64,000 nucleotides of DNA from Pristiophorus japonicus (taxonomy: Eukaryota). The DNA is taken from contig NC_091995.1 in the NCBI RefSeq assembly GCF_044704955.1, forward strand, positions 49,662,001-49,726,000, written 5' to 3'. The notes under the pieces are model-generated. The model saw only the letters and a list, made by a program, of their open reading frames with translations. It did not search any database and was not told where the DNA came from. Position 1 is the first letter of the stretch. The number at the start of each line of letters is the position of its first letter. Below are positions 6,415 to 55,272 of this stretch, piece after piece. Position numbers and translations under genes: made by a program.

Positions 6415-8600
6415 ACCCTCCGACAGTGCAGCAGTCCCTCAGTACTGATCTTCCGACAGTGCAGCGCTCCCTCAGCTGGTCTTCCGACAGTATAGCACTC
6501 CCTCAGTACTGTCCCTCCGACAGTGCAGCATTCCCTCAGTACTGCCCCTCCGACAATGCAGCGCTCCCTCAGTATTGATCTTCCGACAGTGTAGTATTCC
6601 TCAGTACTGCCCTCCGACAATGCAGCACTCCTCCAGTACTGATCCTCCGACAGTGCAGCACTCCCTCAGTACTGCCCCTCCGACAGTGCAGCACTCCCTC
6701 AGTACTGCCCTTCCAACAATGCAGCGCTCCCTCAGTACTATTAAAAGAGATGGCGGAAACTATAGCAGATGCATTCGTTATAATCTACCAAAATTCTCTG
6801 GACTCTAGGGAGGTACCAGCGGATTGGAAAGCAGCTAATGCAACGCCTCTGTTTTTAAAAAAAAAAAGGGGGAAGACAAAAGGCAGGTAACTATAGGCCG
6901 GTTAGTTTAACATCTGTAGTGGGGAAAATGCTTGAAGCTATCATTAAGGAAGAAATAGCAGTACATCTAGATATGAATAGTGCAATCAAGCAGACGCAAC
7001 ATGGATTCATGAAGTGAGAATCATGTTTAACTAATTTACTGGAATTTTTTGAGGATATAATGAGCATGGTGGATAGAGGTGTACTGATGGATGTGGTGTA
7101 TTTAGATATCCAAAAAGCATTCGATAAGGTGCCACACAAAAGGTTACTGCAGAAGATAAAGGTACGTGGAGTCAGAGGAAATGTATTAGCATGGATCGAG
7201 AATTGGCTCGCTAACAGAAAGCAGAGAGTCACGATAAATGGGTCCTTTTTGGGTTGGAAATCGGTGGTTAGTGGTGTGCCACAGGGATCGGTGCTGGGAC
7301 CACAACTGTTTACAATATACGTAGATGACCTGGAAGAGGGGACAGAGTGTAGTGTAACAAAATTTGCAGATGACACAAAGATTAGTAGGAAAGCGGGTTG
7401 TGTAGAGGACACAGAGAGGATGCAAAGGGATTTAGACAGGTTAAGCGAATGGGCTAAGGTTTGGCAGATGGAATACAATGTTGGAAAATGTGAGGTCATC
7501 CACCTTGGGGAAAAAAAAACAGTAAAAGGCAATATTATTTGAATGGGGAGAAATTACAACATGCTGCGGTGCAGAGGGACCTGGGGGTCCTTGCGCATGA
7601 ATCCCAAAAAGTTAGTTTGCAGGTGCAGCAGGTAATCAGGAAGGCGAATGGAATGTTGGCCTTCATTGCGAGAGGGATGGAGTACAAAAGCAAGGAGGTC
7701 CTGCTGCAACTGTACAGGGTATTGGTGAGGCCGCACCTGGAGTACTGCGTGCAGTTTTTGTCACCTTACTTAAGGAAGGATATATTAGCCTTGGAGGGAG
7801 TACAAAGATGATTCTCTAGGCTGATTCCGGAGATGAGGGAGTTACCTTATGATGATAGATTGGGTCTTTACTCGTTGGAGTTCAGAAGGATGAGGGGTGA
7901 TCTTATAGAAACATTCAAAATAATGAAAGGGATAGACAAGATAGAGGCAGAGAGGTTGTTTCCACTGGTCGAGGAGACTCGAACTAGGGGGCACAGCCTC
8001 AAAATACGGGGGAGCCAATTTAAAACCGAGTTGAGAAGGAATTTCTTCTCCCAGAGGGTTGTGAATCTGTGGAATTCTCTGCCCAAGGAAGCAGTTGAGG
8101 CTAGCTCATTGAATGTATTCAAATCACAGATAGATAGATTTTTAACCAATAAGGGAATTAAGGGTTATGGTGAGTGGGTGGGTAAGTGGAGCTGAGTCCA
8201 CGGCCAGATCAGCCATGATCTTTTTGAATGGCGGAGCAGGCTCGAGGGGCTAGATGGCCTACTCCTGTTCCTAATTCTTATGTTCTTATGTACTGTCCCT
8301 CTGACAGTGCAGCACTCCCTCAGTATTGTCCCTCTGACAGTGCAGCACTCCCTCAGTACTGCCCCTGCAACAGTGCAGCTCTCCCTCAGTACTGCCCCTG
8401 CAAAGTGCAACACTCCCTCAGTAGGGATCCTCTGACAGTGCAGCACTCCCTCAGTACTGCTCCTCTGACAGTGCAGCATTCCCTCAGTACCGCCCCTCCC
8501 ACAATGCAGCACTCCCTCGGTACTGCACTGGAGGGTCAGCCTAACTTTTTGTCCTTAAATCTCTGGAGTGGACTTGAACCCACGAGCTTCTGACCTCTGC
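6415..8600 (-). repeat. 33-bp minisatellite expanded inside a reverse-strand Deu-type SINE and split by a CR1
   Basis: Unit ~CCCTCCGACAGTGCAGCACTCCCTCAGTACTGC at 6415-6740 and 8290-8530 is the reverse complement of the SINE core; the SINE head remnant (GGACTTGAACCCACG) follows at 8530-8600. Confidence 0.8.
6741..8290 (+). mobile_element. CR1 LINE, 5'-truncated (RT plus 3' end)
   Basis: YLDIQKAFDKVPH, PQGSVLGP, FADDT motifs; TTCTTATGTTCTTATG tail. Confidence 0.92.
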
Positions 8601-24189: not shown

Positions 24190-25917
24190 GGAAGTGGCAG
24201 AGACGTTAAACAAATATTTTGTATTGGTCTTCACGGAAGAAGACACTAAAAACATCTCAACAGTGGATATTCAAGGGGCTAAAGGTAGGGAGGAACTTAA
24301 TACATCACTATCACTAATGAAGTAGTACTCGGTAAAATAATGGGACTAAAGGTGGTCAAGTCCCCTGGAAATGATGCCTTACATCCTAGGGTCATAAGAG
24401 AAGTGGCTGCAGCGATAGTGGATGCATTGGTTGTAATCTACCAAAATTCCCTGGATTCTGGGGAGGTCCCAGCAGATTGGAAAACCGAAAATGCAACACC
24501 CCTATTTAAAAAAGGAGGCAGACAAAAAGCAGGAAACTATAGACCAGTTCACCGAACATCTCTCGTTGGGAAAATGCTGGAGTCCATTATTAAGGAAGCA
24601 GTTGCGGGACATTTGGAAAAGCATGATTCAATCAAGCAGAGTCAGCATTGCTTTATGAAAGGGATATCATGTTTGACAAATTTGCTGGAGTTCTTTGAGG
24701 ATATAACGAGCAGGGTGACGAAGGGGGATCAATGAATGTGATGTATTTGGGTTTCCAGAAGGTGCCACGTAAGAGGTTACTGAACGAGATAAAAGCTCAT
24801 GGGGTTGGGATAATATTTTAGCATATATAGAGGATTGGCTCACTAACAGAAAACAGAGAGTCGGGATAAATGGGTCATTTTCCAGTTGGCAAACAGTGAC
24901 TAGTGGGGTGCCACAGGGATCGGTCCTCAACTATTTACAATCTATATTAATGACTTGGATGAAGGGACCGAGTGTAATGTAGCCACGTTTGCTGATGATA
25001 CAAAGATGGTTGGGAAAGCAACTTGTGAGGAGGACACAAAAAATCTGCAAAGGGATATGGACAGGCTAAGTGAGTGGGCAAAAATTTGGCAGATGGAGTA
25101 TAATGTGGGAAAATGTGAGGTTATCGACTTTGGCAGAAATAATAGAAAAGCAAATTATAACTTAACTGGAGAAAAATTGCAAAGTGCTACAGTACAGAGA
25201 GACCTGGGGATCCTTGTGCATGAAACACAAAAAGTTAGTATGCAGATACAGCAAGTAATCAGGAAGGCAAATGGAATGTAGGCCTTTATTGCAAGGGGAA
25301 TAGAGTATAAAAGCAGAGAAGTCCGACTACAAATGTACAGGGTATTGGTGAGGCCACACCTGGAGTACTGCGTACAGTTTAGGTCTCTGTATTTAAGGAA
25401 GGATATACTTGCATTGGAGGCTGTTCAGAGATGGTTCACTTGGTTGATTCCGGAGATGAGGGGGTTGACTTATGAAGATAGGTTGGGTAGGTTGGGCCTA
25501 TACTCATTGGAGTTCAAAAGAATGAGCGGTGATCTTATTGAGAGTTATAAAATAATGAGGGGGCTCGACAAGGTGGATGCAGAGAGGATATTTCCACTCA
25601 TAGGGGAAACTAAAACTAGGGTACATAGTCTTAGAATAAGGGGCCGCCCATTTAAAACTGAGATGAGGAGACATTTTTTCTGTGAGAGTTGTAAATCTGT
25701 GGAATTCTCTGCCCCAAAGAGCTATGGAGGCCGGGTCATTGAATATATTTATGGAGATAGACAGATTTTTGAGCGATAGGGGAGTAAAGGGTTATGGGGA
25801 GCAGGCAGGAAAATGGAGCTGGGCCCATGATCAGATTAGCCATGATCTTATTGAATGGCGGAGCAGGCTCGAGGAGCCAATTGGCCTACTCCTGCTCCTA
25901 TTTATTATGTTCCTATG
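24190..25917 (+). mobile_element. CR1 LINE, 5'-truncated
   Basis: KSPGND.LHPR, NYRPV, FADDT and C-terminal CR1 motifs; tail TATGTTCCTATG. Confidence 0.9.
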
Positions 25918-46142: not shown

Positions 46143-46990
46143 TAACATAAATAGGAGCAAGTGTAGGCTGCTTGGACCCTCGAGCCTGCTCCGCCTTTCA
46201 ATAAGATCATATCTGATCTGATCGTGGACTCAGCTCCACTTCCCTGCCCGCTCCCCAAAACCCTTTATTCCCTTATCGCTCAAAAATCTGTCTATCTCCG
46301 CCTTAAATATATTCAATGACCCAGCCTCCACAGCTCTTTGGGGCAGAGAATTCCATAGAGTTGCAACCCTCTGAGAGAAGAAATCCCTCCTCATCTCAGT
46401 TTTAAATGGGCGGCCCCTTATTCTGAGACTATGCCCCCTAGTTTTAGTTTCCCCTATGAATCGAAATATCCTCTTTGCATCCACCTTGTCGAGCCGCCTC
46501 ATTATCTTATAAGTTTCAATAGATCACCTCTTATTCTTCTGAACTCCAATGTAAATAGATCCAACCAACTCGACCTATCTTCATAAGTCAGCACTCTCAT
46601 CTCCGGAATCAACCTAGTGAACCTTCTCTGAACAGCCTCCAATGCAAGTATATCCTTCCTTAAATACGGAGACCAAAACTGTACGCAGTACTCCAGGTGT
46701 GGCCTCACCAATACCCTGTACAGTTGGAGCAAGACTTCCCTGCCTCTATACTCTATCCCCTTTGCAATAAAGGCCCGCATTCCATTTGCCTTCCTGATCA
46801 CTTGCTGTACCTGCATACTAGTCTTTTGTGTTTCATGCACAAGGACCCCCAGGTCCCTCTGTACTGCAGCACTTTGCAACTTTTCTCCATTTACATTATA
46901 ATTTGCTTTGCTTTTATTTATGCCAAAGTGGATAATCTCACATTTTACCACATTATACTCTATCTGCCAAATATTTGTCCACTCACTTCG
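46143..46990 (-). mobile_element. CR1 3' fragment (contains an empty TTCATGCACAAGGA site at 46832-46845)
   Basis: ORFs 46230-46951 give the CR1 C-terminus. Confidence 0.9.
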
Positions 46991-51690: not shown

Positions 51691-52367
51691 AGGTGGAGCA
51701 CAGGGTGATGGGTGAATGGGGATAGGACTGGGAATGGTACTGAGAGGAAAGCTCTTTCAGAGATTTCATTGCCTTGTACTACAGTGTACATGTGCTAACT
51801 CTCCCCATTACACTTTGACAATTTGAATACATTCAATGAGCTAGCCTCATCTGCTTCCTTGGGCAGAGATTTCCACAGATTCACAACCCTCTGGGAGAAG
51901 AAATTCCTTCTCAACACGGTTTTAAATTGGCTCCCCTGTATTTTGAGGCTGTACCCCCTAGTTCTAGTCTCCCCGGCCAGTGGAAACAACCTCTCTGCCT
52001 CTATCTTGTCTATCCCTTTCATGATTTTAAATGTTTCTATAAGATCACCCCTCATCCTTCTGAACTCCAACGAGTAAAGACCCAGTCTACTCAATCTATC
52101 ATCATAAGGTAACCCCCTCATCTCCGATATCAGCCGAGTGAATCGTCTCTGTACCCCCTCCAAAGCTAGTATATCCTTCCTTAAGTAAGGAGACCAAAAC
52201 TGCACGCAGTACTCCAGGTGTGGCCTCACCAATACCCTGTACAGTTGCAGCAGGACCTCCCTGCTTTTTGTACTCCATCCCTCTCGCAATGAAGGCCAAC
52301 ATTTCATTCGCCTTCTTGATTACCTGCTGCACCTGCAAACTAACTTTTTGGGATTCATGCACAAGGA

Positions 52368-52835
52368 AGTTGTTTGATGGTGGTGCAGTGGTAAGAATGG
52401 TTGCCTTCCAAGCAGTTGACTTGGGTTCGCTTCTCTCCCATCACATTTTGTCAATTTTCAACCTGACTGCCTGCCTCTCTTCAGCTCTTACATCCGGTCC
52501 AGGGTGTCCTTGGAGATGGAGCACGCGGTGTCCACCGGTACGCTCGCGGCCTTCCGCGAGAGGTGGGCACCGGAGGGACTGGAGTGCATCATCACGCCCG
52601 GCAACCAAATTTTAATTTGATTTTACGTTTTTAAGTTTAATTTGTTTAAATTGCCGGTGCTTTTAGTGTCCCCCTTCCCTTTTATAGGGGGCACTGGAAA
52701 AATTTGATTTTAGCGCCCCAAAAAAAAAAACCAAAAAACAAAAAAAAAAAGGGGCCTTGAAAATGTCTGGAGTGTCACCCAGGTCGGGTGGCACCGTTTA
52801 ATGTTTTTATGTTTTGCAGGTAAACTCAAAAGAGT
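52368..52835 (+). mobile_element. Chimeric SINE-like element copy 1: tRNA-Gly head plus Tx1-LINE 3' end
   Basis: Flanked by TTCATGCACAAGGA (52354-52367, 52836-52849). Tail encodes QPDCLPLFSSYIRSRVSLEMEHAVSTGTLAAFRERWAPEGLECIITPGNQILI*, recognised as Tx1-type ORF2 C-terminus, followed by a structured 3' UTR. Confidence 0.8.
52374..52445 (+). tRNA. tRNA-Gly(TCC)-derived sequence (element head)
   Basis: 72 nt, colinear with eukaryotic tRNA-Gly-TCC: anticodon arm TTGCC-TTCCAA-GCAG, GGTTCG T-loop, acceptor TGATGG/CCATCA; followed by TTTT. T-stem and box B are degenerate. Confidence 0.8.
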
Positions 52836-52849
52836 TTCATGCACAAGGA

Positions 52850-53304
52850 AGTTGTTTGATGGTGGTGCAGTGGTAAGAATGGTTGCCTTCCAAGCAGTTG
52901 ACTTGGGTTCGCTTCTCTCCCATCACATTTTGTCAATTTTCAACCTGACTGCCTGCCTCTCTTCAGCTCTTACATCCGGTCCAGGGTGTCCTTGGAGATG
53001 GAGCACGCGGTGTCCACCGGTACGCTCGCGGCCTTCCGCGAGAGGTGGGCACCGGAGGGACTGGAGTGCATCATCACGCCCGGCAACCAAATTTTAATTT
53101 GATTTTACGTTTTAAAGTTTAATTTGTTTTCATTGCCGGTGCTTTTAGTGTCCCCCTCCCCTTTTATAGGGGGCACTGGAAAAATTTGATTTTAGCGCCC
53201 CAAAAAAAAAAAAAAAAAGGGGCCTTGAAAATGTCTGCTGTGTCACCCAGGTCGGGTGGCATGGTTTTAATGTTATATGTTTTTGCAGGTTAACTCAAAA
53301 GAGT
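52850..53304 (+). mobile_element. Chimeric SINE-like element copy 2
   Basis: Same head and Tx1 tail; third target copy at 53305-53318. Confidence 0.8.
52856..52927 (+). tRNA. tRNA-Gly(TCC)-derived sequence (element head, copy 2)
   Basis: Identical to 52374-52445. Confidence 0.8.
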
Positions 53305-53859
53305 TTCATGCACAAGGACTCCCAGGTCCCTCTGCACCGCAGTATGTTGTAATTTCTCCCCATTCAAATAATATTCCTTTTTACTGTTTTTTTTCCCAAG
53401 GTGGATGACCTCACATTTTCCGACATTGTATTCCATCTGCCAAACCTTAGCCCATTCGCTTAACCTATCTAAATCTCTTTGCAGCCTCTCTGTGTCCTCT
53501 ACACAACCCGCTTTCCCACTAATCTTTGTGTCAACTGCAAATTTTGTTACACTGCACTCTGTCCCCTCTTCCAGGTCATCTATGTATATTGTAAACCGGC
53601 AAGGCCAGCATTTATTGCCCAACTCTTATTGCGCTTAAGCAGGTGGTCATGATCTACCTTCTTGACTACATCTGAGTGACTATCTGAGCCACTTTTGAGA
53701 GAAGTTAAGAGTCAACCTCATTGCTGTGGGTCTGGAGTCACATATAGGCCAGACTGGGTAAGGAGGGCAGATTTCCTTCCCTAAAGTGGTCACCATTACT
53801 GCTGCTAGTTTTTAAAAAATACAGATTTATTTAATTATTTTGAAATGAATATGCCTAGC

Positions 53860-55272
53860 GAGAAAACGGGTAATTATAGACCGGTTAGCCTGACATCAGT
53901 AGTGGGGAAATAATCAATTATTAAACATGAAATAGCAGCGCATTTGGAAAGCAGTGACAGGATCGGTCCAAGTCAGCATGGATTTATGAAAGGGAAATCA
54001 TGCTTGACAAATCTTCTGGAATATTTTGAGGATGTAAGTAGTAGAGTGGACAAGTGAGAACCAGTGGATGTGGTGTATTTGGACTTTCAAAAGGCTTTTG
54101 ACAAGGTGCCACACAAGAGATTGGTGTGCAAAATCAAAGCACATGGTACTGGGGGTAATGTACTGACTTGGATAGAGAACTGGTTGGCAGACAGGAAGCA
54201 GAGAGTCGGGATTAACGGGTCCTTTTCAAAATGGCAGACAGTGACTGGTGGAGTGCCACAGGGCTCAGTGCTGGGACCCCAGCTCTTTACAATATGCATT
54301 AATGATTTAGATGAGGGAATTGAGTGTAATATCTCCAAGTTTGAAGATGACACTAAACTGGGTGATAGTGTGAGCTGTGAGGAGGACGCTAAAAGGCTGC
54401 AGGGTGACTTGGACAGGTTAGGTGAGTGGGCAAACGCATGGCAGAGGCAGTATAATGTGGATAAATGTGAGGTTATCCACTTTGGGGGCAAAAACACGAA
54501 GGCAGAATATTATCTGAGTGGCGGCAGATTAGGAAAGAGGAAGGTGCAACAAGATCTGGGTGTCATGGTTAATCAGTCATTGAAAGTTGGCATGCAGGTA
54601 CAGCAGGCGGTGAAGAAGGCAAATGGTATGTTGGCCTTCATAGCTAGGGGATTTGAGTATAGGAGCAGGGTCTTACTGCAGTTGTACAGGGCCTTAGTGA
54701 GGCCTCACCTGGAACATTGTGTTCAGTTTTGGTCTCCCAATCTGAGGAAGGACGTTCTTGCTATTGAGGGAGTGCAGCAAAGGTTCACCAGACTGATTCC
54801 CGGGATGGCGGGACTGACAGATGAGGAGAGACTGGATCAACTGGGCCTTTATACACTGGAGTTTAGAAGGATGAGAGGAGATCTCACAGAAACTTACAAG
54901 ATTCTGATGGGACTGGTCAGGTTAGATGCGGGAAGAATGTTCCCGATGAAGGGGAAGTCCAGAACCAGGGGACAGTGTCTTAGGATAAGGGGTAGGCCAT
55001 TTAGGACTGAGATGAGGAGAAACTTCTTCACTCAGAGAGTTGTTAACCTGTGGAATTCCCTACCATAGAGAGGTGTTGATGCCAGTTAATTGGATATATT
55101 CAAGAGGGAGTTAGATATGGCTCTTACAACTAAAGGGATCAAGGGGTATGGAGAGAATGCAGGAAAGGAGTACTGAAGGAATGATCAGCCATGATCTTAT
55201 TGAATGGTGGTGCAGGCTCGAAGGGCTGAATGGCCTACTCCTGCACCTATTTTCTATGTTTCTATGTTTCTA
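53860..55272 (+). mobile_element. CR1 LINE, 5'-truncated
   Basis: 334-aa RT ORF 54064-55068; (TTTCTATG)n tail. Confidence 0.92.

What the first reader, a model, noticed from the sequence alone, without database searches (positions are those of the whole stretch)
52354..53318. tRNA-Gly/Tx1 chimeric retroelement inserted twice at one site inside a CR1 LINE: a candidate site-specific parasite of a parasite
Seen: the layout is TSD-element-TSD-element-TSD, with three identical copies of TTCATGCACAAGGA interrupting a CR1 RT region. The same site is empty in other CR1 copies here (46832-46845; reverse complement near 25211). Each ~460-bp unit is a 6-nt leader, a 72-nt tRNA-Gly(TCC), TTTT and a short trailer, the last ~54 codons of a Tx1-type ORF2, and a 3' UTR ending AAAAGAGT with no poly(A). 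The heads are identical but the 3' UTRs differ at several positions, which fits two successive insertions better than one recent duplication. Known: Tx1-clade LINEs are often sequence-specific, and SINEs borrow the 3' tail of their partner LINE. Inference: this is a Tx1-mobilised SINE family that uses a very abundant CR1 motif as a safe-harbour target and builds tandem arrays by re-targeting its own TSD.
Basis: partly seen in the sequence, partly recalled or inferred. Interest (0 to 1): 0.9.

Follow-up and report, generated by a model that had tools for sequence, protein, structure and literature searches.

The report
Pre-tRNA/LINE chimera duplicated in CR1
Two adjacent copies of a small hybrid retrocopy (a whole tRNA-Gly-like primary transcript fused to the last 379 bases of a site-specific LINE) sit at that LINE's usual landing site inside a CR1 element. 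They look like a reverse-transcriptase template-switch chimera copied on the spot, not a proven new SINE family.

Summary
Three exact copies of a 14-base target bracket two head-to-tail units (468 and 455 bases) inside a minus-strand CR1-like reverse-transcriptase gene. Other CR1 copies in the window show the same site empty.

Each unit is a 6-base leader, a degenerate tRNA-Gly(TCC)-like sequence and a trailer ending in a T-run. This is joined in sense to the last 54 codons and 3'UTR of a LINE ORF2.

The SINE-family reading is not supported:
- The head looks like one complete Pol III primary transcript, as in U6/L1-type chimeras.
- Each unit carries ten or eleven T4-5 runs, the first directly after the tRNA.
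- In public runs of the same organism the head is about 30 to 30,000 times rarer than the LINE tail.
- No second locus was found.

All differences between the units lie in the 3'UTR, and they spare or compensate three hairpins. So the two tails look like two functional LINE variants. The second unit is therefore probably a local recombinant: either a new insertion that copied its neighbour, or a duplication followed by conversion.

This scan had already found, elsewhere in this genome, the CR1-targeting Tx1 LINE, its stacking, and 5S and pre-tRNA-Ile chimeras. I did not test Tx1 clade membership here.

The parts
52354..52367 (+). Target-site copy 1 (TTCATGCACAAGGA). On the CR1 sense strand it encodes V-L-V-H-E of the RT.
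52368..52456 (+). Head of unit 1: 6-nt leader, tRNA-Gly(TCC)-like sequence (52374-52445) and a trailer ending in a T-run. It looks like a complete Pol III primary transcript.
52457..52620 (+). Unit 1: last 54 codons of the LINE ORF2 plus the stop (TGA 52618-52620). TT at 52457-52458 could come from either partner (microhomology).
52621..52835 (+). Unit 1: LINE 3'UTR with three hairpins (52661-52699; 52708-52762 with an A-run loop; 52770-52795). It ends in AAAAGAGT with no poly(A).
52836..52849 (+). Target-site copy 2, between the two units.
52850..52938 (+). Head of unit 2, identical to the head of unit 1.
52939..53102 (+). Unit 2: ORF2 tail plus stop, identical to unit 1. Contigs of organisms B and C match from 52939 onwards; upstream of it they read different, authentic ORF2 sequence.
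53103..53304 (+). Unit 2: 3'UTR variant with hairpins at 53143-53181, 53190-53230 and 53237-53265. It differs from unit 1 by 10 substitutions and 4 indels.
53305..53318 (+). Target-site copy 3.
51795..52353 (-). Host CR1-like LINE, the part 3' of the insertion in its own sense (ORF pieces 52102-52362 and 51795-52307).
53319..53622 (-). Host CR1-like LINE, RT part 5' of the insertion. It gives a weak RVT_1 match.
46832..46845 (+). Empty target site in another CR1-like copy.
25211..25224 (-). Empty target site in another CR1-like copy.
7588..7601 (-). Empty target site (one mismatch) in the CR1-like copy closest to the host copy.

Best explanation
A site-specific LINE inserted once at its usual 14-base target inside a CR1-like copy. 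Earlier follow-ups of this scan call this LINE Tx1-type; I confirmed only that the tail is a LINE ORF2 C-terminus.

In that event the cDNA was only 379 nt long when the reverse transcriptase left the LINE RNA. It then continued on the U-tailed 3' end of a complete Pol III primary transcript of a degenerate tRNA-Gly(TCC)-like gene, using a 2-nt TT microhomology. Prior RNA ligation would give the same product. The result is a pre-tRNA/LINE chimeric retrocopy flanked by one target duplication.

The second unit was made on the spot from the first. The more likely route is a new target-primed reverse transcription at the regenerated target. It would have been primed on a LINE RNA carrying another 3'UTR variant. 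Its cDNA then switched, in the homologous ORF2-tail region, to the resident unit (its DNA or a read-through RNA), copied it through the head into the target sequence, and annealed there.

Shown: the anatomy, the junction, the rarity of the head, and the recombinant pattern. Inferred: the template switch and the route to the second unit. This is not an established Pol III-driven SINE family.
For: 1. **Junction.** Contigs of organisms B and C match 52939-53141 and 52939-53093 with 1-2 differences. Upstream of 52939 they read a sequence that translates in frame to SRQRAVEGV, the motif that relatives carry at that position. So the LINE is truncated inside ORF2, and the head ends in its own T-run.
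2. **Head.** The head is a leader, a tRNA-like sequence and a trailer with two T4 runs. That is one whole Pol III transcript, as in U6/L1 chimeras (PMC4476161, PMC6789731).
3. **Abundance.** LINE-tail bins sum to 0.5-1.0 million in X1 and 29-56 thousand in X5. Head bins sum to 3.5-17 thousand in X1 and 1.7-10 in X5. This meets Kojima's criterion for chimeras as opposed to a SINE family (PMC4494074).
4. **Pol III terminators.** Each unit has 10-11 runs of T4-5, the first at unit position 79.
5. **Recombinant pattern.** All 10 substitutions and 4 indels lie in the 3'UTR (P about 4e-4 if spread uniformly). They fall in hairpin loops, in linkers, or on opposite arms of hairpin 3, where both versions still pair. 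No 'other letter' row appears at those positions despite summed depths of 19-268 thousand. Each version therefore seems to be shared by many other LINE copies.
6. **Local origin.** With the head so rare, a second independent hit by the same chimera at the same site is very unlikely, so the second unit probably arose locally.
7. **Leads from the scan, not tested here.** Notes describe stacking of this LINE at the CR1 site (s1-877521, s1-877177, s1-874695), a 5S/LINE chimera present three times in one local pile (s1-876471), and a pre-tRNA-Ile/LINE chimera (s1-877432).
Against: - I could not search the whole genome, so a small dispersed family with the same junction is not excluded.
- Summed contig depth is not a copy number. 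The X1 head bins (3.5-17 thousand) are far above a single-copy level of roughly 10, either because similar tRNA-like repeats also map there or because more copies exist.
- The tRNA-like head is degenerate (34 bits), so its source was not a canonical tRNA gene. It could be the head of an existing repeat family.
- The covariation rests on two sequences only.
- Copying of a resident unit by a nascent cDNA has not been demonstrated for Tx1 elements.
Confidence: 0.55

Rival explanations
1. One chimeric insertion was followed by a DNA-level tandem duplication, by unequal exchange or replication slippage between the 14-base target copies. The 3'UTR of one unit was later overwritten by ectopic gene conversion from one of the many other LINE-in-CR1 insertions.
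For: - The layout target-unit-target-unit-target is exactly what exchange between target copies gives.
- The first 264 nt of the units are identical, including 13 CpGs.
- Thousands of homologous LINE 3' ends followed by the same target and CR1 flank would be available as donors.
Against: - It needs two separate rare events.
- 14 bases is very short for homologous exchange.
- The conversion tract would have to end just after the stop codon.
- Stacking by repeated insertion is reported as frequent at this site in this genome (scan notes, not tested here).
Confidence: 0.22
2. One reading: a genuine tRNA-Gly-headed, Tx1-tailed SINE family with a constant junction. The site-specific LINE mobilises it in trans, and it has hit this CR1 site twice.
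For: - The head keeps recognisable A- and B-box-like motifs and is degenerate, as old SINE heads are.
- The tail is the partner LINE's 3' end.
- Two units share an identical junction but have different tails.
- X1 head bins are well above single-copy depth.
- SINEs are known to arise from tRNA-LINE chimeras (PMC5786205), and SINEs mobilised by target-specific Tx1 elements are known (PMC4494074).
Against: - No second locus turned up: none in the window, none in a junction-spanning protein search (a blank of little weight), and none among the notes on 453 windows of this genome.
- The head is 30 to 30,000 times rarer than the tail, so two independent hits at one site are improbable.
- Pol III would meet 10-11 terminators, the first two within 12 nt of the tRNA end.
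- Differences confined to the 3'UTR are not what two family members should show.
Confidence: 0.15
3. One event inserted a dimeric RNA, a read-through transcript of a pre-existing two-unit array elsewhere. Alternatively, the two-unit array is an assembly artefact of a single unit.
For: - Head-to-tail arrays with the target copy between units are reported as common for this LINE (scan notes).
- Logan contigs show other stacked, truncated tails, for example the joint 52839 to 52559.
Against: - It only moves the origin of the dimer to another locus.
- An artefact would not create 10 substitutions with paired changes in a hairpin.
Confidence: 0.05

Closest known systems
U6/L1 and other small-RNA/LINE chimeric retrocopies made by template switching or RNA ligation (PMC4476161, PMC6789731, PMC2104539, PMC11838501)
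   Same: - A full-length Pol III transcript in sense, ending in its own U-run, is fused to a 5'-truncated LINE that keeps its native 3' end.
- One target-site duplication surrounds the whole.
- The chimeras are far rarer than the LINE.
   Different: - The partner is a sequence-specific LINE without poly(A), not L1.
- The captured RNA is an unprocessed tRNA-like precursor with leader and trailer. The reported primate tRNA/L1 chimeras are mostly tRNA halves in antisense (PMC11838501).
- The chimera is present twice, in tandem, with recombinant 3'UTRs.
SINEU families and Tx1-Mar in crocodilians (Kojima 2015, PMC4494074)
   Same: - Short retroposons with small-RNA heads are mobilised by target-specific Tx1 LINEs that aim at another transposon.
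- Template switching adds heads.
- Elements sit next to each other at the target.
   Different: - SINEU are true families (dozens to thousands of copies, shared internal deletions, several master copies), and no LINE shares the SINEU-1 tail.
- Here only one locus is known and the LINE tail is hugely abundant.
- The target is a CR1-like LINE, not a Mariner.
Tx1L in Tx1D (Xenopus) and other target-specific Tx1-clade LINEs such as Keno, Kibi, Koshi, Tx1-8_Crp and Tx1-4_AMi (as reviewed in PMC4494074)
   Same: - A LINE that inserts at one fixed sequence inside another repeat.
- There is a target duplication and no reliance on poly(A).
   Different: - The target here is the RT gene of a CR1-like LINE. 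This scan had already noted that on other DNA of this genome.
- I did not test clade membership of the partner.
SINEs whose body and tail come from the 3' part of a LINE, born from tRNA- or 5S-LINE chimeras (Kojima 2018, PMC5786205; Okada and Ohshima model)
   Same: The architecture is a tRNA-like head, then the end of the LINE ORF, then the LINE 3'UTR.
   Different: - No evidence of amplification beyond the spot.
- Internal Pol III terminators have not been purged.

Membership tests
SINE (tRNA-headed, SINE2 type) | Head derived from a Pol III gene with an internal promoter | tested here: met
   ARAGORN calls tRNA-Gly(TCC) and Rfam tRNA scores 34.1 bits. A- and B-box-like motifs were read by eye. 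The T stem is degenerate.
SINE (tRNA-headed, SINE2 type) | The whole element can be transcribed by Pol III, with no terminator before the 3' tail | tested here: not met
   Each unit has 10-11 runs of T4-5. The first two are at unit positions 79-82 and 88-91, directly after the tRNA.
SINE (tRNA-headed, SINE2 type) | 3' tail shared with a partner LINE | tested here: met
   The tail is the ORF2 C-terminus plus 3'UTR. It is very abundant in runs of the same organism and present in two other organisms.
SINE (tRNA-headed, SINE2 type) | Many copies at independent loci with a constant head/body junction | tested here: inconclusive
   Only the two adjacent units are known. The head is 30 to 30,000 times rarer than the tail. 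No other note exists in this genome. No whole-genome search was possible.
Small-RNA/LINE chimeric retrocopy (template-switch type) | 5' part is a complete small RNA in sense, ending at its native 3' end | tested here: met
   Leader, tRNA-like sequence and a trailer ending in a T-run at 52455-52458.
Small-RNA/LINE chimeric retrocopy (template-switch type) | 3' part is a 5'-truncated LINE with its native 3' end | tested here: met
   Contigs of organisms B and C continue upstream of 52939 with in-frame ORF2 sequence (SRQRAVEGV).
Small-RNA/LINE chimeric retrocopy (template-switch type) | One target-site duplication flanks the whole chimera | tested here: met
   Exact 14-base repeats and empty sites.
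Small-RNA/LINE chimeric retrocopy (template-switch type) | LINE copies with the same tail greatly outnumber the chimera | tested here: met
   Depth table. This is a rough measure: summed contig depth, not copy number.
Tx1 clade of non-LTR retrotransposons (the partner LINE) | RT and endonuclease group with Tx1 in a phylogeny | not tested
Relatives found are C-terminal fragments only. The Tx1 label comes from earlier follow-ups of this scan.
Tx1 clade of non-LTR retrotransposons (the partner LINE) | ORF2 C-terminal zinc knuckle region | tested here: inconclusive
   Relatives ending in the same tail carry Pfam zf-RVT (PF13966). The fragment here starts downstream of the knuckle. The domain is not specific to Tx1.
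Tx1 clade of non-LTR retrotransposons (the partner LINE) | Sequence-specific insertion | tested here: inconclusive
   One filled site and three empty sites share the motif in the window. The exact empty-site joint appears in three runs. No well-supported loose ends follow the LINE 3' end. Independent filled sites were not seen here.

The most novel reading that the evidence does not exclude
The locus may show a SINE at its birth, or a new way in which site-specific LINE stacks grow. A Pol III-transcript/LINE chimera, once placed at the LINE's own regenerated target, is copied again in cis. A fresh LINE cDNA switches onto the neighbouring unit, so that chimeras with 5S or tRNA heads multiply on the spot. 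Such chimeras could seed a CR1-site-specific, Tx1-tailed SINE lineage.
Probability: 0.15. Interest if true: 0.7.

Novelty: new member of a known kind. Interest (0 to 1): 0.38.

Why it matters
The locus is a clean natural example of a LINE reverse transcriptase capturing an unprocessed Pol III transcript. It comes from a LINE group and a vertebrate lineage (cartilaginous fish) where such chimeras are little documented.

Its two units, with one shared 5' part and two different structured 3'UTR variants, hint that stacks at a regenerated target can grow by copying the neighbour. If that were confirmed genome-wide, it would bear on how SINEs are born and how site-specific LINE arrays expand.

As it stands, the locus does not establish a new SINE family. 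The CR1-targeting LINE was already noted by this scan on other DNA of the same genome.

Tried and rejected
- **Other copies in the window.** BLASTN of the unit against the window, word size 7, found none.
- **Junction-spanning protein search.** The frame-2 ORF across target, tRNA and LINE tail (52843-53094) gave no hit against 5.8 billion proteins. Such spurious ORFs are probably not in that collection, so this is no evidence.
- **Metagenome scan.** A 28-base piece of the ORF tail gave no match.
- **Representative protein search.** P0002, P0005 and P0010 were rejected as repeat-protein false positives (SEA-domain mucin, SprB-type repeats).
- **Profile search for source names.** Only mis-annotated alligator and turtle gene models came back, none named Tx1. 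The PDB search was blank. The Atlas gave only 'hypothetical protein, zf-RVT' clusters.
- **Upstream sequences from other contigs.** Two loose-end sequences, from contigs of other organisms and from another run of organism A, were searched in the window and are absent.
- **Simple tandem duplication with neutral decay.** Rejected because all differences lie in the 3'UTR and spare the hairpins.
- **Literature.** No paper in the searchable library describes Tx1 targeting CR1 in sharks.
- **Copy number.** The only read-laying run used Logan contigs, so copy numbers, transcript ends and the array itself could not be measured.
Full report
**1.

The 14-mer TTCATGCACAAGGA stands exactly at 52354, 52836 and 53305. 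Shuffles of the window give 0.04 matches. It brackets two units, 52368-52835 (468 nt) and 52850-53304 (455 nt).

ARAGORN finds only two tRNA-like genes in the 64 kb, both tRNA-Gly(TCC), at 52373-52446 and 52855-52928. Rfam's tRNA model scores them 34.1 bits (gathering score 29) with mismatches in the T stem. They are degenerate, tRNA-like sequences rather than canonical tRNAs.

**2. The host and the empty sites**

The flanks belong to a minus-strand LINE reverse-transcriptase gene. The ORF pieces 53290-53622 and 52102-52362 read ...RDLGVLVHE | SQKVSLQVQQ... across the site. The upstream piece gives a weak RVT_1 match.

Three other copies in the window carry the same motif uninterrupted: 46832 (+), 25211 (-) and 7588 (-, one mismatch). 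The 7588 copy is 97% and 93% identical to the left and right flanks of the filled site. Logan contigs of three runs contain the exact empty-site joint, 52353 to 53305, with 14 shared letters. I did not test the label CR1.

**3. Where the two parts of a unit meet**

A frame is open from 52447 to the stop TGA at 52618-52620. Its last 53 residues were searched with phmmer against 1.84 billion representative proteins. The real hits, at 52-67% identity, are six fragments that all end at this same C-terminus. Upstream of it they carry a CCHC zinc knuckle, Pfam zf-RVT. Three further hits were repeat-protein false positives.

In the alignment the relatives read ...SRQRAVEG..DCLPLF.... Contigs of two other organisms (X8 and X12) match unit 2 from 52939 onwards with 1-2 differences over 155-203 nt. 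Upstream of 52939 they read a sequence that translates, in the same frame, to SRQRAVEGV.

So the LINE-derived part begins at 52457 in unit 1 and 52939 in unit 2, inside ORF2. It is 379 nt long in unit 1: 54 codons plus a 215-nt 3'UTR. What lies before it belongs to the head, which ends in a T-run. Two T's could come from either partner.

**4. What the head is**

The head (52368-52456) has three parts:
- a 6-nt leader starting with a purine;
- the tRNA-like sequence;
- a trailer in which a first T4 directly follows the tRNA and a second T4 ends the head.

This is the anatomy of one complete, unprocessed Pol III primary transcript that read through a weak terminator and stopped at the next. A full-length Pol III RNA, in sense and ending in its own U-run, joined to a 5'-truncated LINE within one target duplication, defines the U6/L1-type chimeras. 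These are ascribed to template switching of the LINE reverse transcriptase, or to prior RNA ligation (PMC4476161, PMC6789731, PMC2104539). tRNA/L1 chimeras are known in primates, but they are mostly tRNA halves in antisense (PMC11838501).

**5. Is it a SINE family?**

Kojima's criteria for telling a family from independent chimeras (PMC4494074) go against a family here.

- *Abundance.* In the same organism the LINE tail is extremely abundant and the head is rare.

| Run | LINE-tail bins (summed contig depth) | Head bins (summed contig depth) |
|---|---|---|
| X1 | 0.5-1.0 million | 3.5-17 thousand |
| X5 | 29-56 thousand | 1.7-10 |

  Depth summed over contigs is not a copy number, and similar tRNA-like repeats may add to the head bins. 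The gap is nevertheless 30-fold to 30,000-fold.
- *Pol III terminators.* Each unit holds 10-11 runs of T4-5, two of them within 12 nt of the tRNA end. Pol III starting in the head should hardly ever reach the 3' tail that the LINE enzyme needs.
- *Other loci.* I found none. There is no copy in the window, none in a junction-spanning protein search (a blank of little weight), and none among the notes on 453 windows of this genome.

**6. Why there are two units**

The units are identical over the first 264 nt, which cover the head, the ORF tail and 13 CpGs. All 10 substitutions and 4 indels lie in the 3'UTR. If differences fell uniformly the probability would be about 4e-4.

The 3'UTR folds into three hairpins in both units:

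| Hairpin | Unit 1 | Unit 2 |
|---|---|---|
| 1 | 52661-52699 | 53143-53181 |
| 2 | 52708-52762 | 53190-53230 |
| 3 | 52770-52795 | 53237-53265 |

The differences fall as follows:
- in the loop of hairpin 1;
- in the A-run loop of hairpin 2;
- in AU-rich linkers;
- as two dinucleotide changes (GA to CT, CC to TG) on opposite arms of hairpin 3. Both versions still pair there: 10 pairs with a bulge in unit 1 and 12 pairs in unit 2.

The read table lists no 'other letter' at those positions, although summed depths there are 19-268 thousand. It does flag a private letter of unit 2 at 53131. I read this as two functional 3'UTR variants of the LINE population, not decay in place. Each unit is thus a recombinant: a shared 5' part with its own 3'UTR.

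Because the head is so rare, a second independent trans-insertion of the same chimera at the same site is very unlikely. The second unit must derive locally from the first.

**7. The mechanism I think most likely (inferred)**

The target is regenerated by the duplication. Earlier follow-ups of this scan report that this LINE stacks there repeatedly. One search also shows contigs with other truncated tails stacked behind a LINE 3' end.

A new target-primed reverse transcription would start on a LINE RNA with the other 3'UTR variant. In the homologous ORF-tail region the cDNA would switch to the resident unit (its DNA or a read-through RNA). It would copy that unit through the head into the 14-base target, then anneal to the target overhang. 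This yields target-unit-target-unit-target in one step.

The main rival is a DNA duplication between the 14-base repeats followed by ectopic gene conversion of one 3'UTR. It fits the sequence equally well but needs two rare events.

An earlier follow-up (s1-876471) described a 5S/LINE chimera present three times in one pile and used the phrase 'multiplied on the spot'. I did not check that locus, but it is the same pattern.

**8. Comparison and verdict**

- *Site-specific Tx1-clade LINEs aiming at other transposons.* These are known: Tx1L in Tx1D, Tx1-Mar in a Mariner, and others in LTR elements (PMC4494074).
- *SINE-like passengers of such LINEs.* Known as SINEU.
- *SINEs born from tRNA-LINE chimeras.* Known (PMC5786205).
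- *The CR1 target.* This scan had already noted it on other DNA of this genome (s1-874695, s1-877521, s1-877177).

What this locus adds is a sense-oriented whole pre-tRNA chimera of that LINE, present twice with recombinant tails. I file it as a new member of the known kind 'small-RNA/LINE chimeric retrocopy'.

I did not test Tx1 clade membership of the partner. The relatives found are C-terminal fragments from alligator and turtle gene models without informative names, and no solved structure matches.

Noticed in passing
window 52491-52581 (contig of run X5): A 360-nt contig of depth 892 from another run of the same organism matches the LINE tail only from 52491 onwards. Upstream it carries at least 255 nt of unrelated sequence. 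This may be an abundant non-autonomous element, or a second chimera type, that shares this tail.
   Followed up: partly
window 52367/52828 joint (run X1): Three contigs join the target motif, four extra letters (CTCT) and only the last 8 nt or so of the LINE 3' end, followed again by the target. These look like ultra-short insertions at the same site, and the inserted piece is nearly palindromic.
   Followed up: no
window 52377-52406 and 52856-52888 (run X12): In organism C a 31-nt contig of depth 1450 and a 1277-nt contig match only the 5' half of the tRNA-like head, then continue with a different T-arm. The head's 5' half resembles an abundant tRNA-derived repeat in a related species.
   Followed up: no
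window 52939-53141 (runs X8 and X12): The ORF2 tail is 99% identical in contigs of two other organisms, at depths near single copy. The LINE family is shared across at least three species and is strikingly conserved there.
   Followed up: no
window 54064-55068 (+): An adjacent, oppositely oriented CR1-like copy has an intact 334-aa RT ORF (RVT_1, E 7e-20). Its sequence at the equivalent position does not carry the 14-base target.
   Followed up: partly
window 52200-52353 + 53305-53375 (run X12 record 9): A 440-nt contig of organism C shows the empty site with 98% identity to both flanks. It is either the orthologous empty locus or a close paralogue, and I cannot tell which.
   Followed up: no
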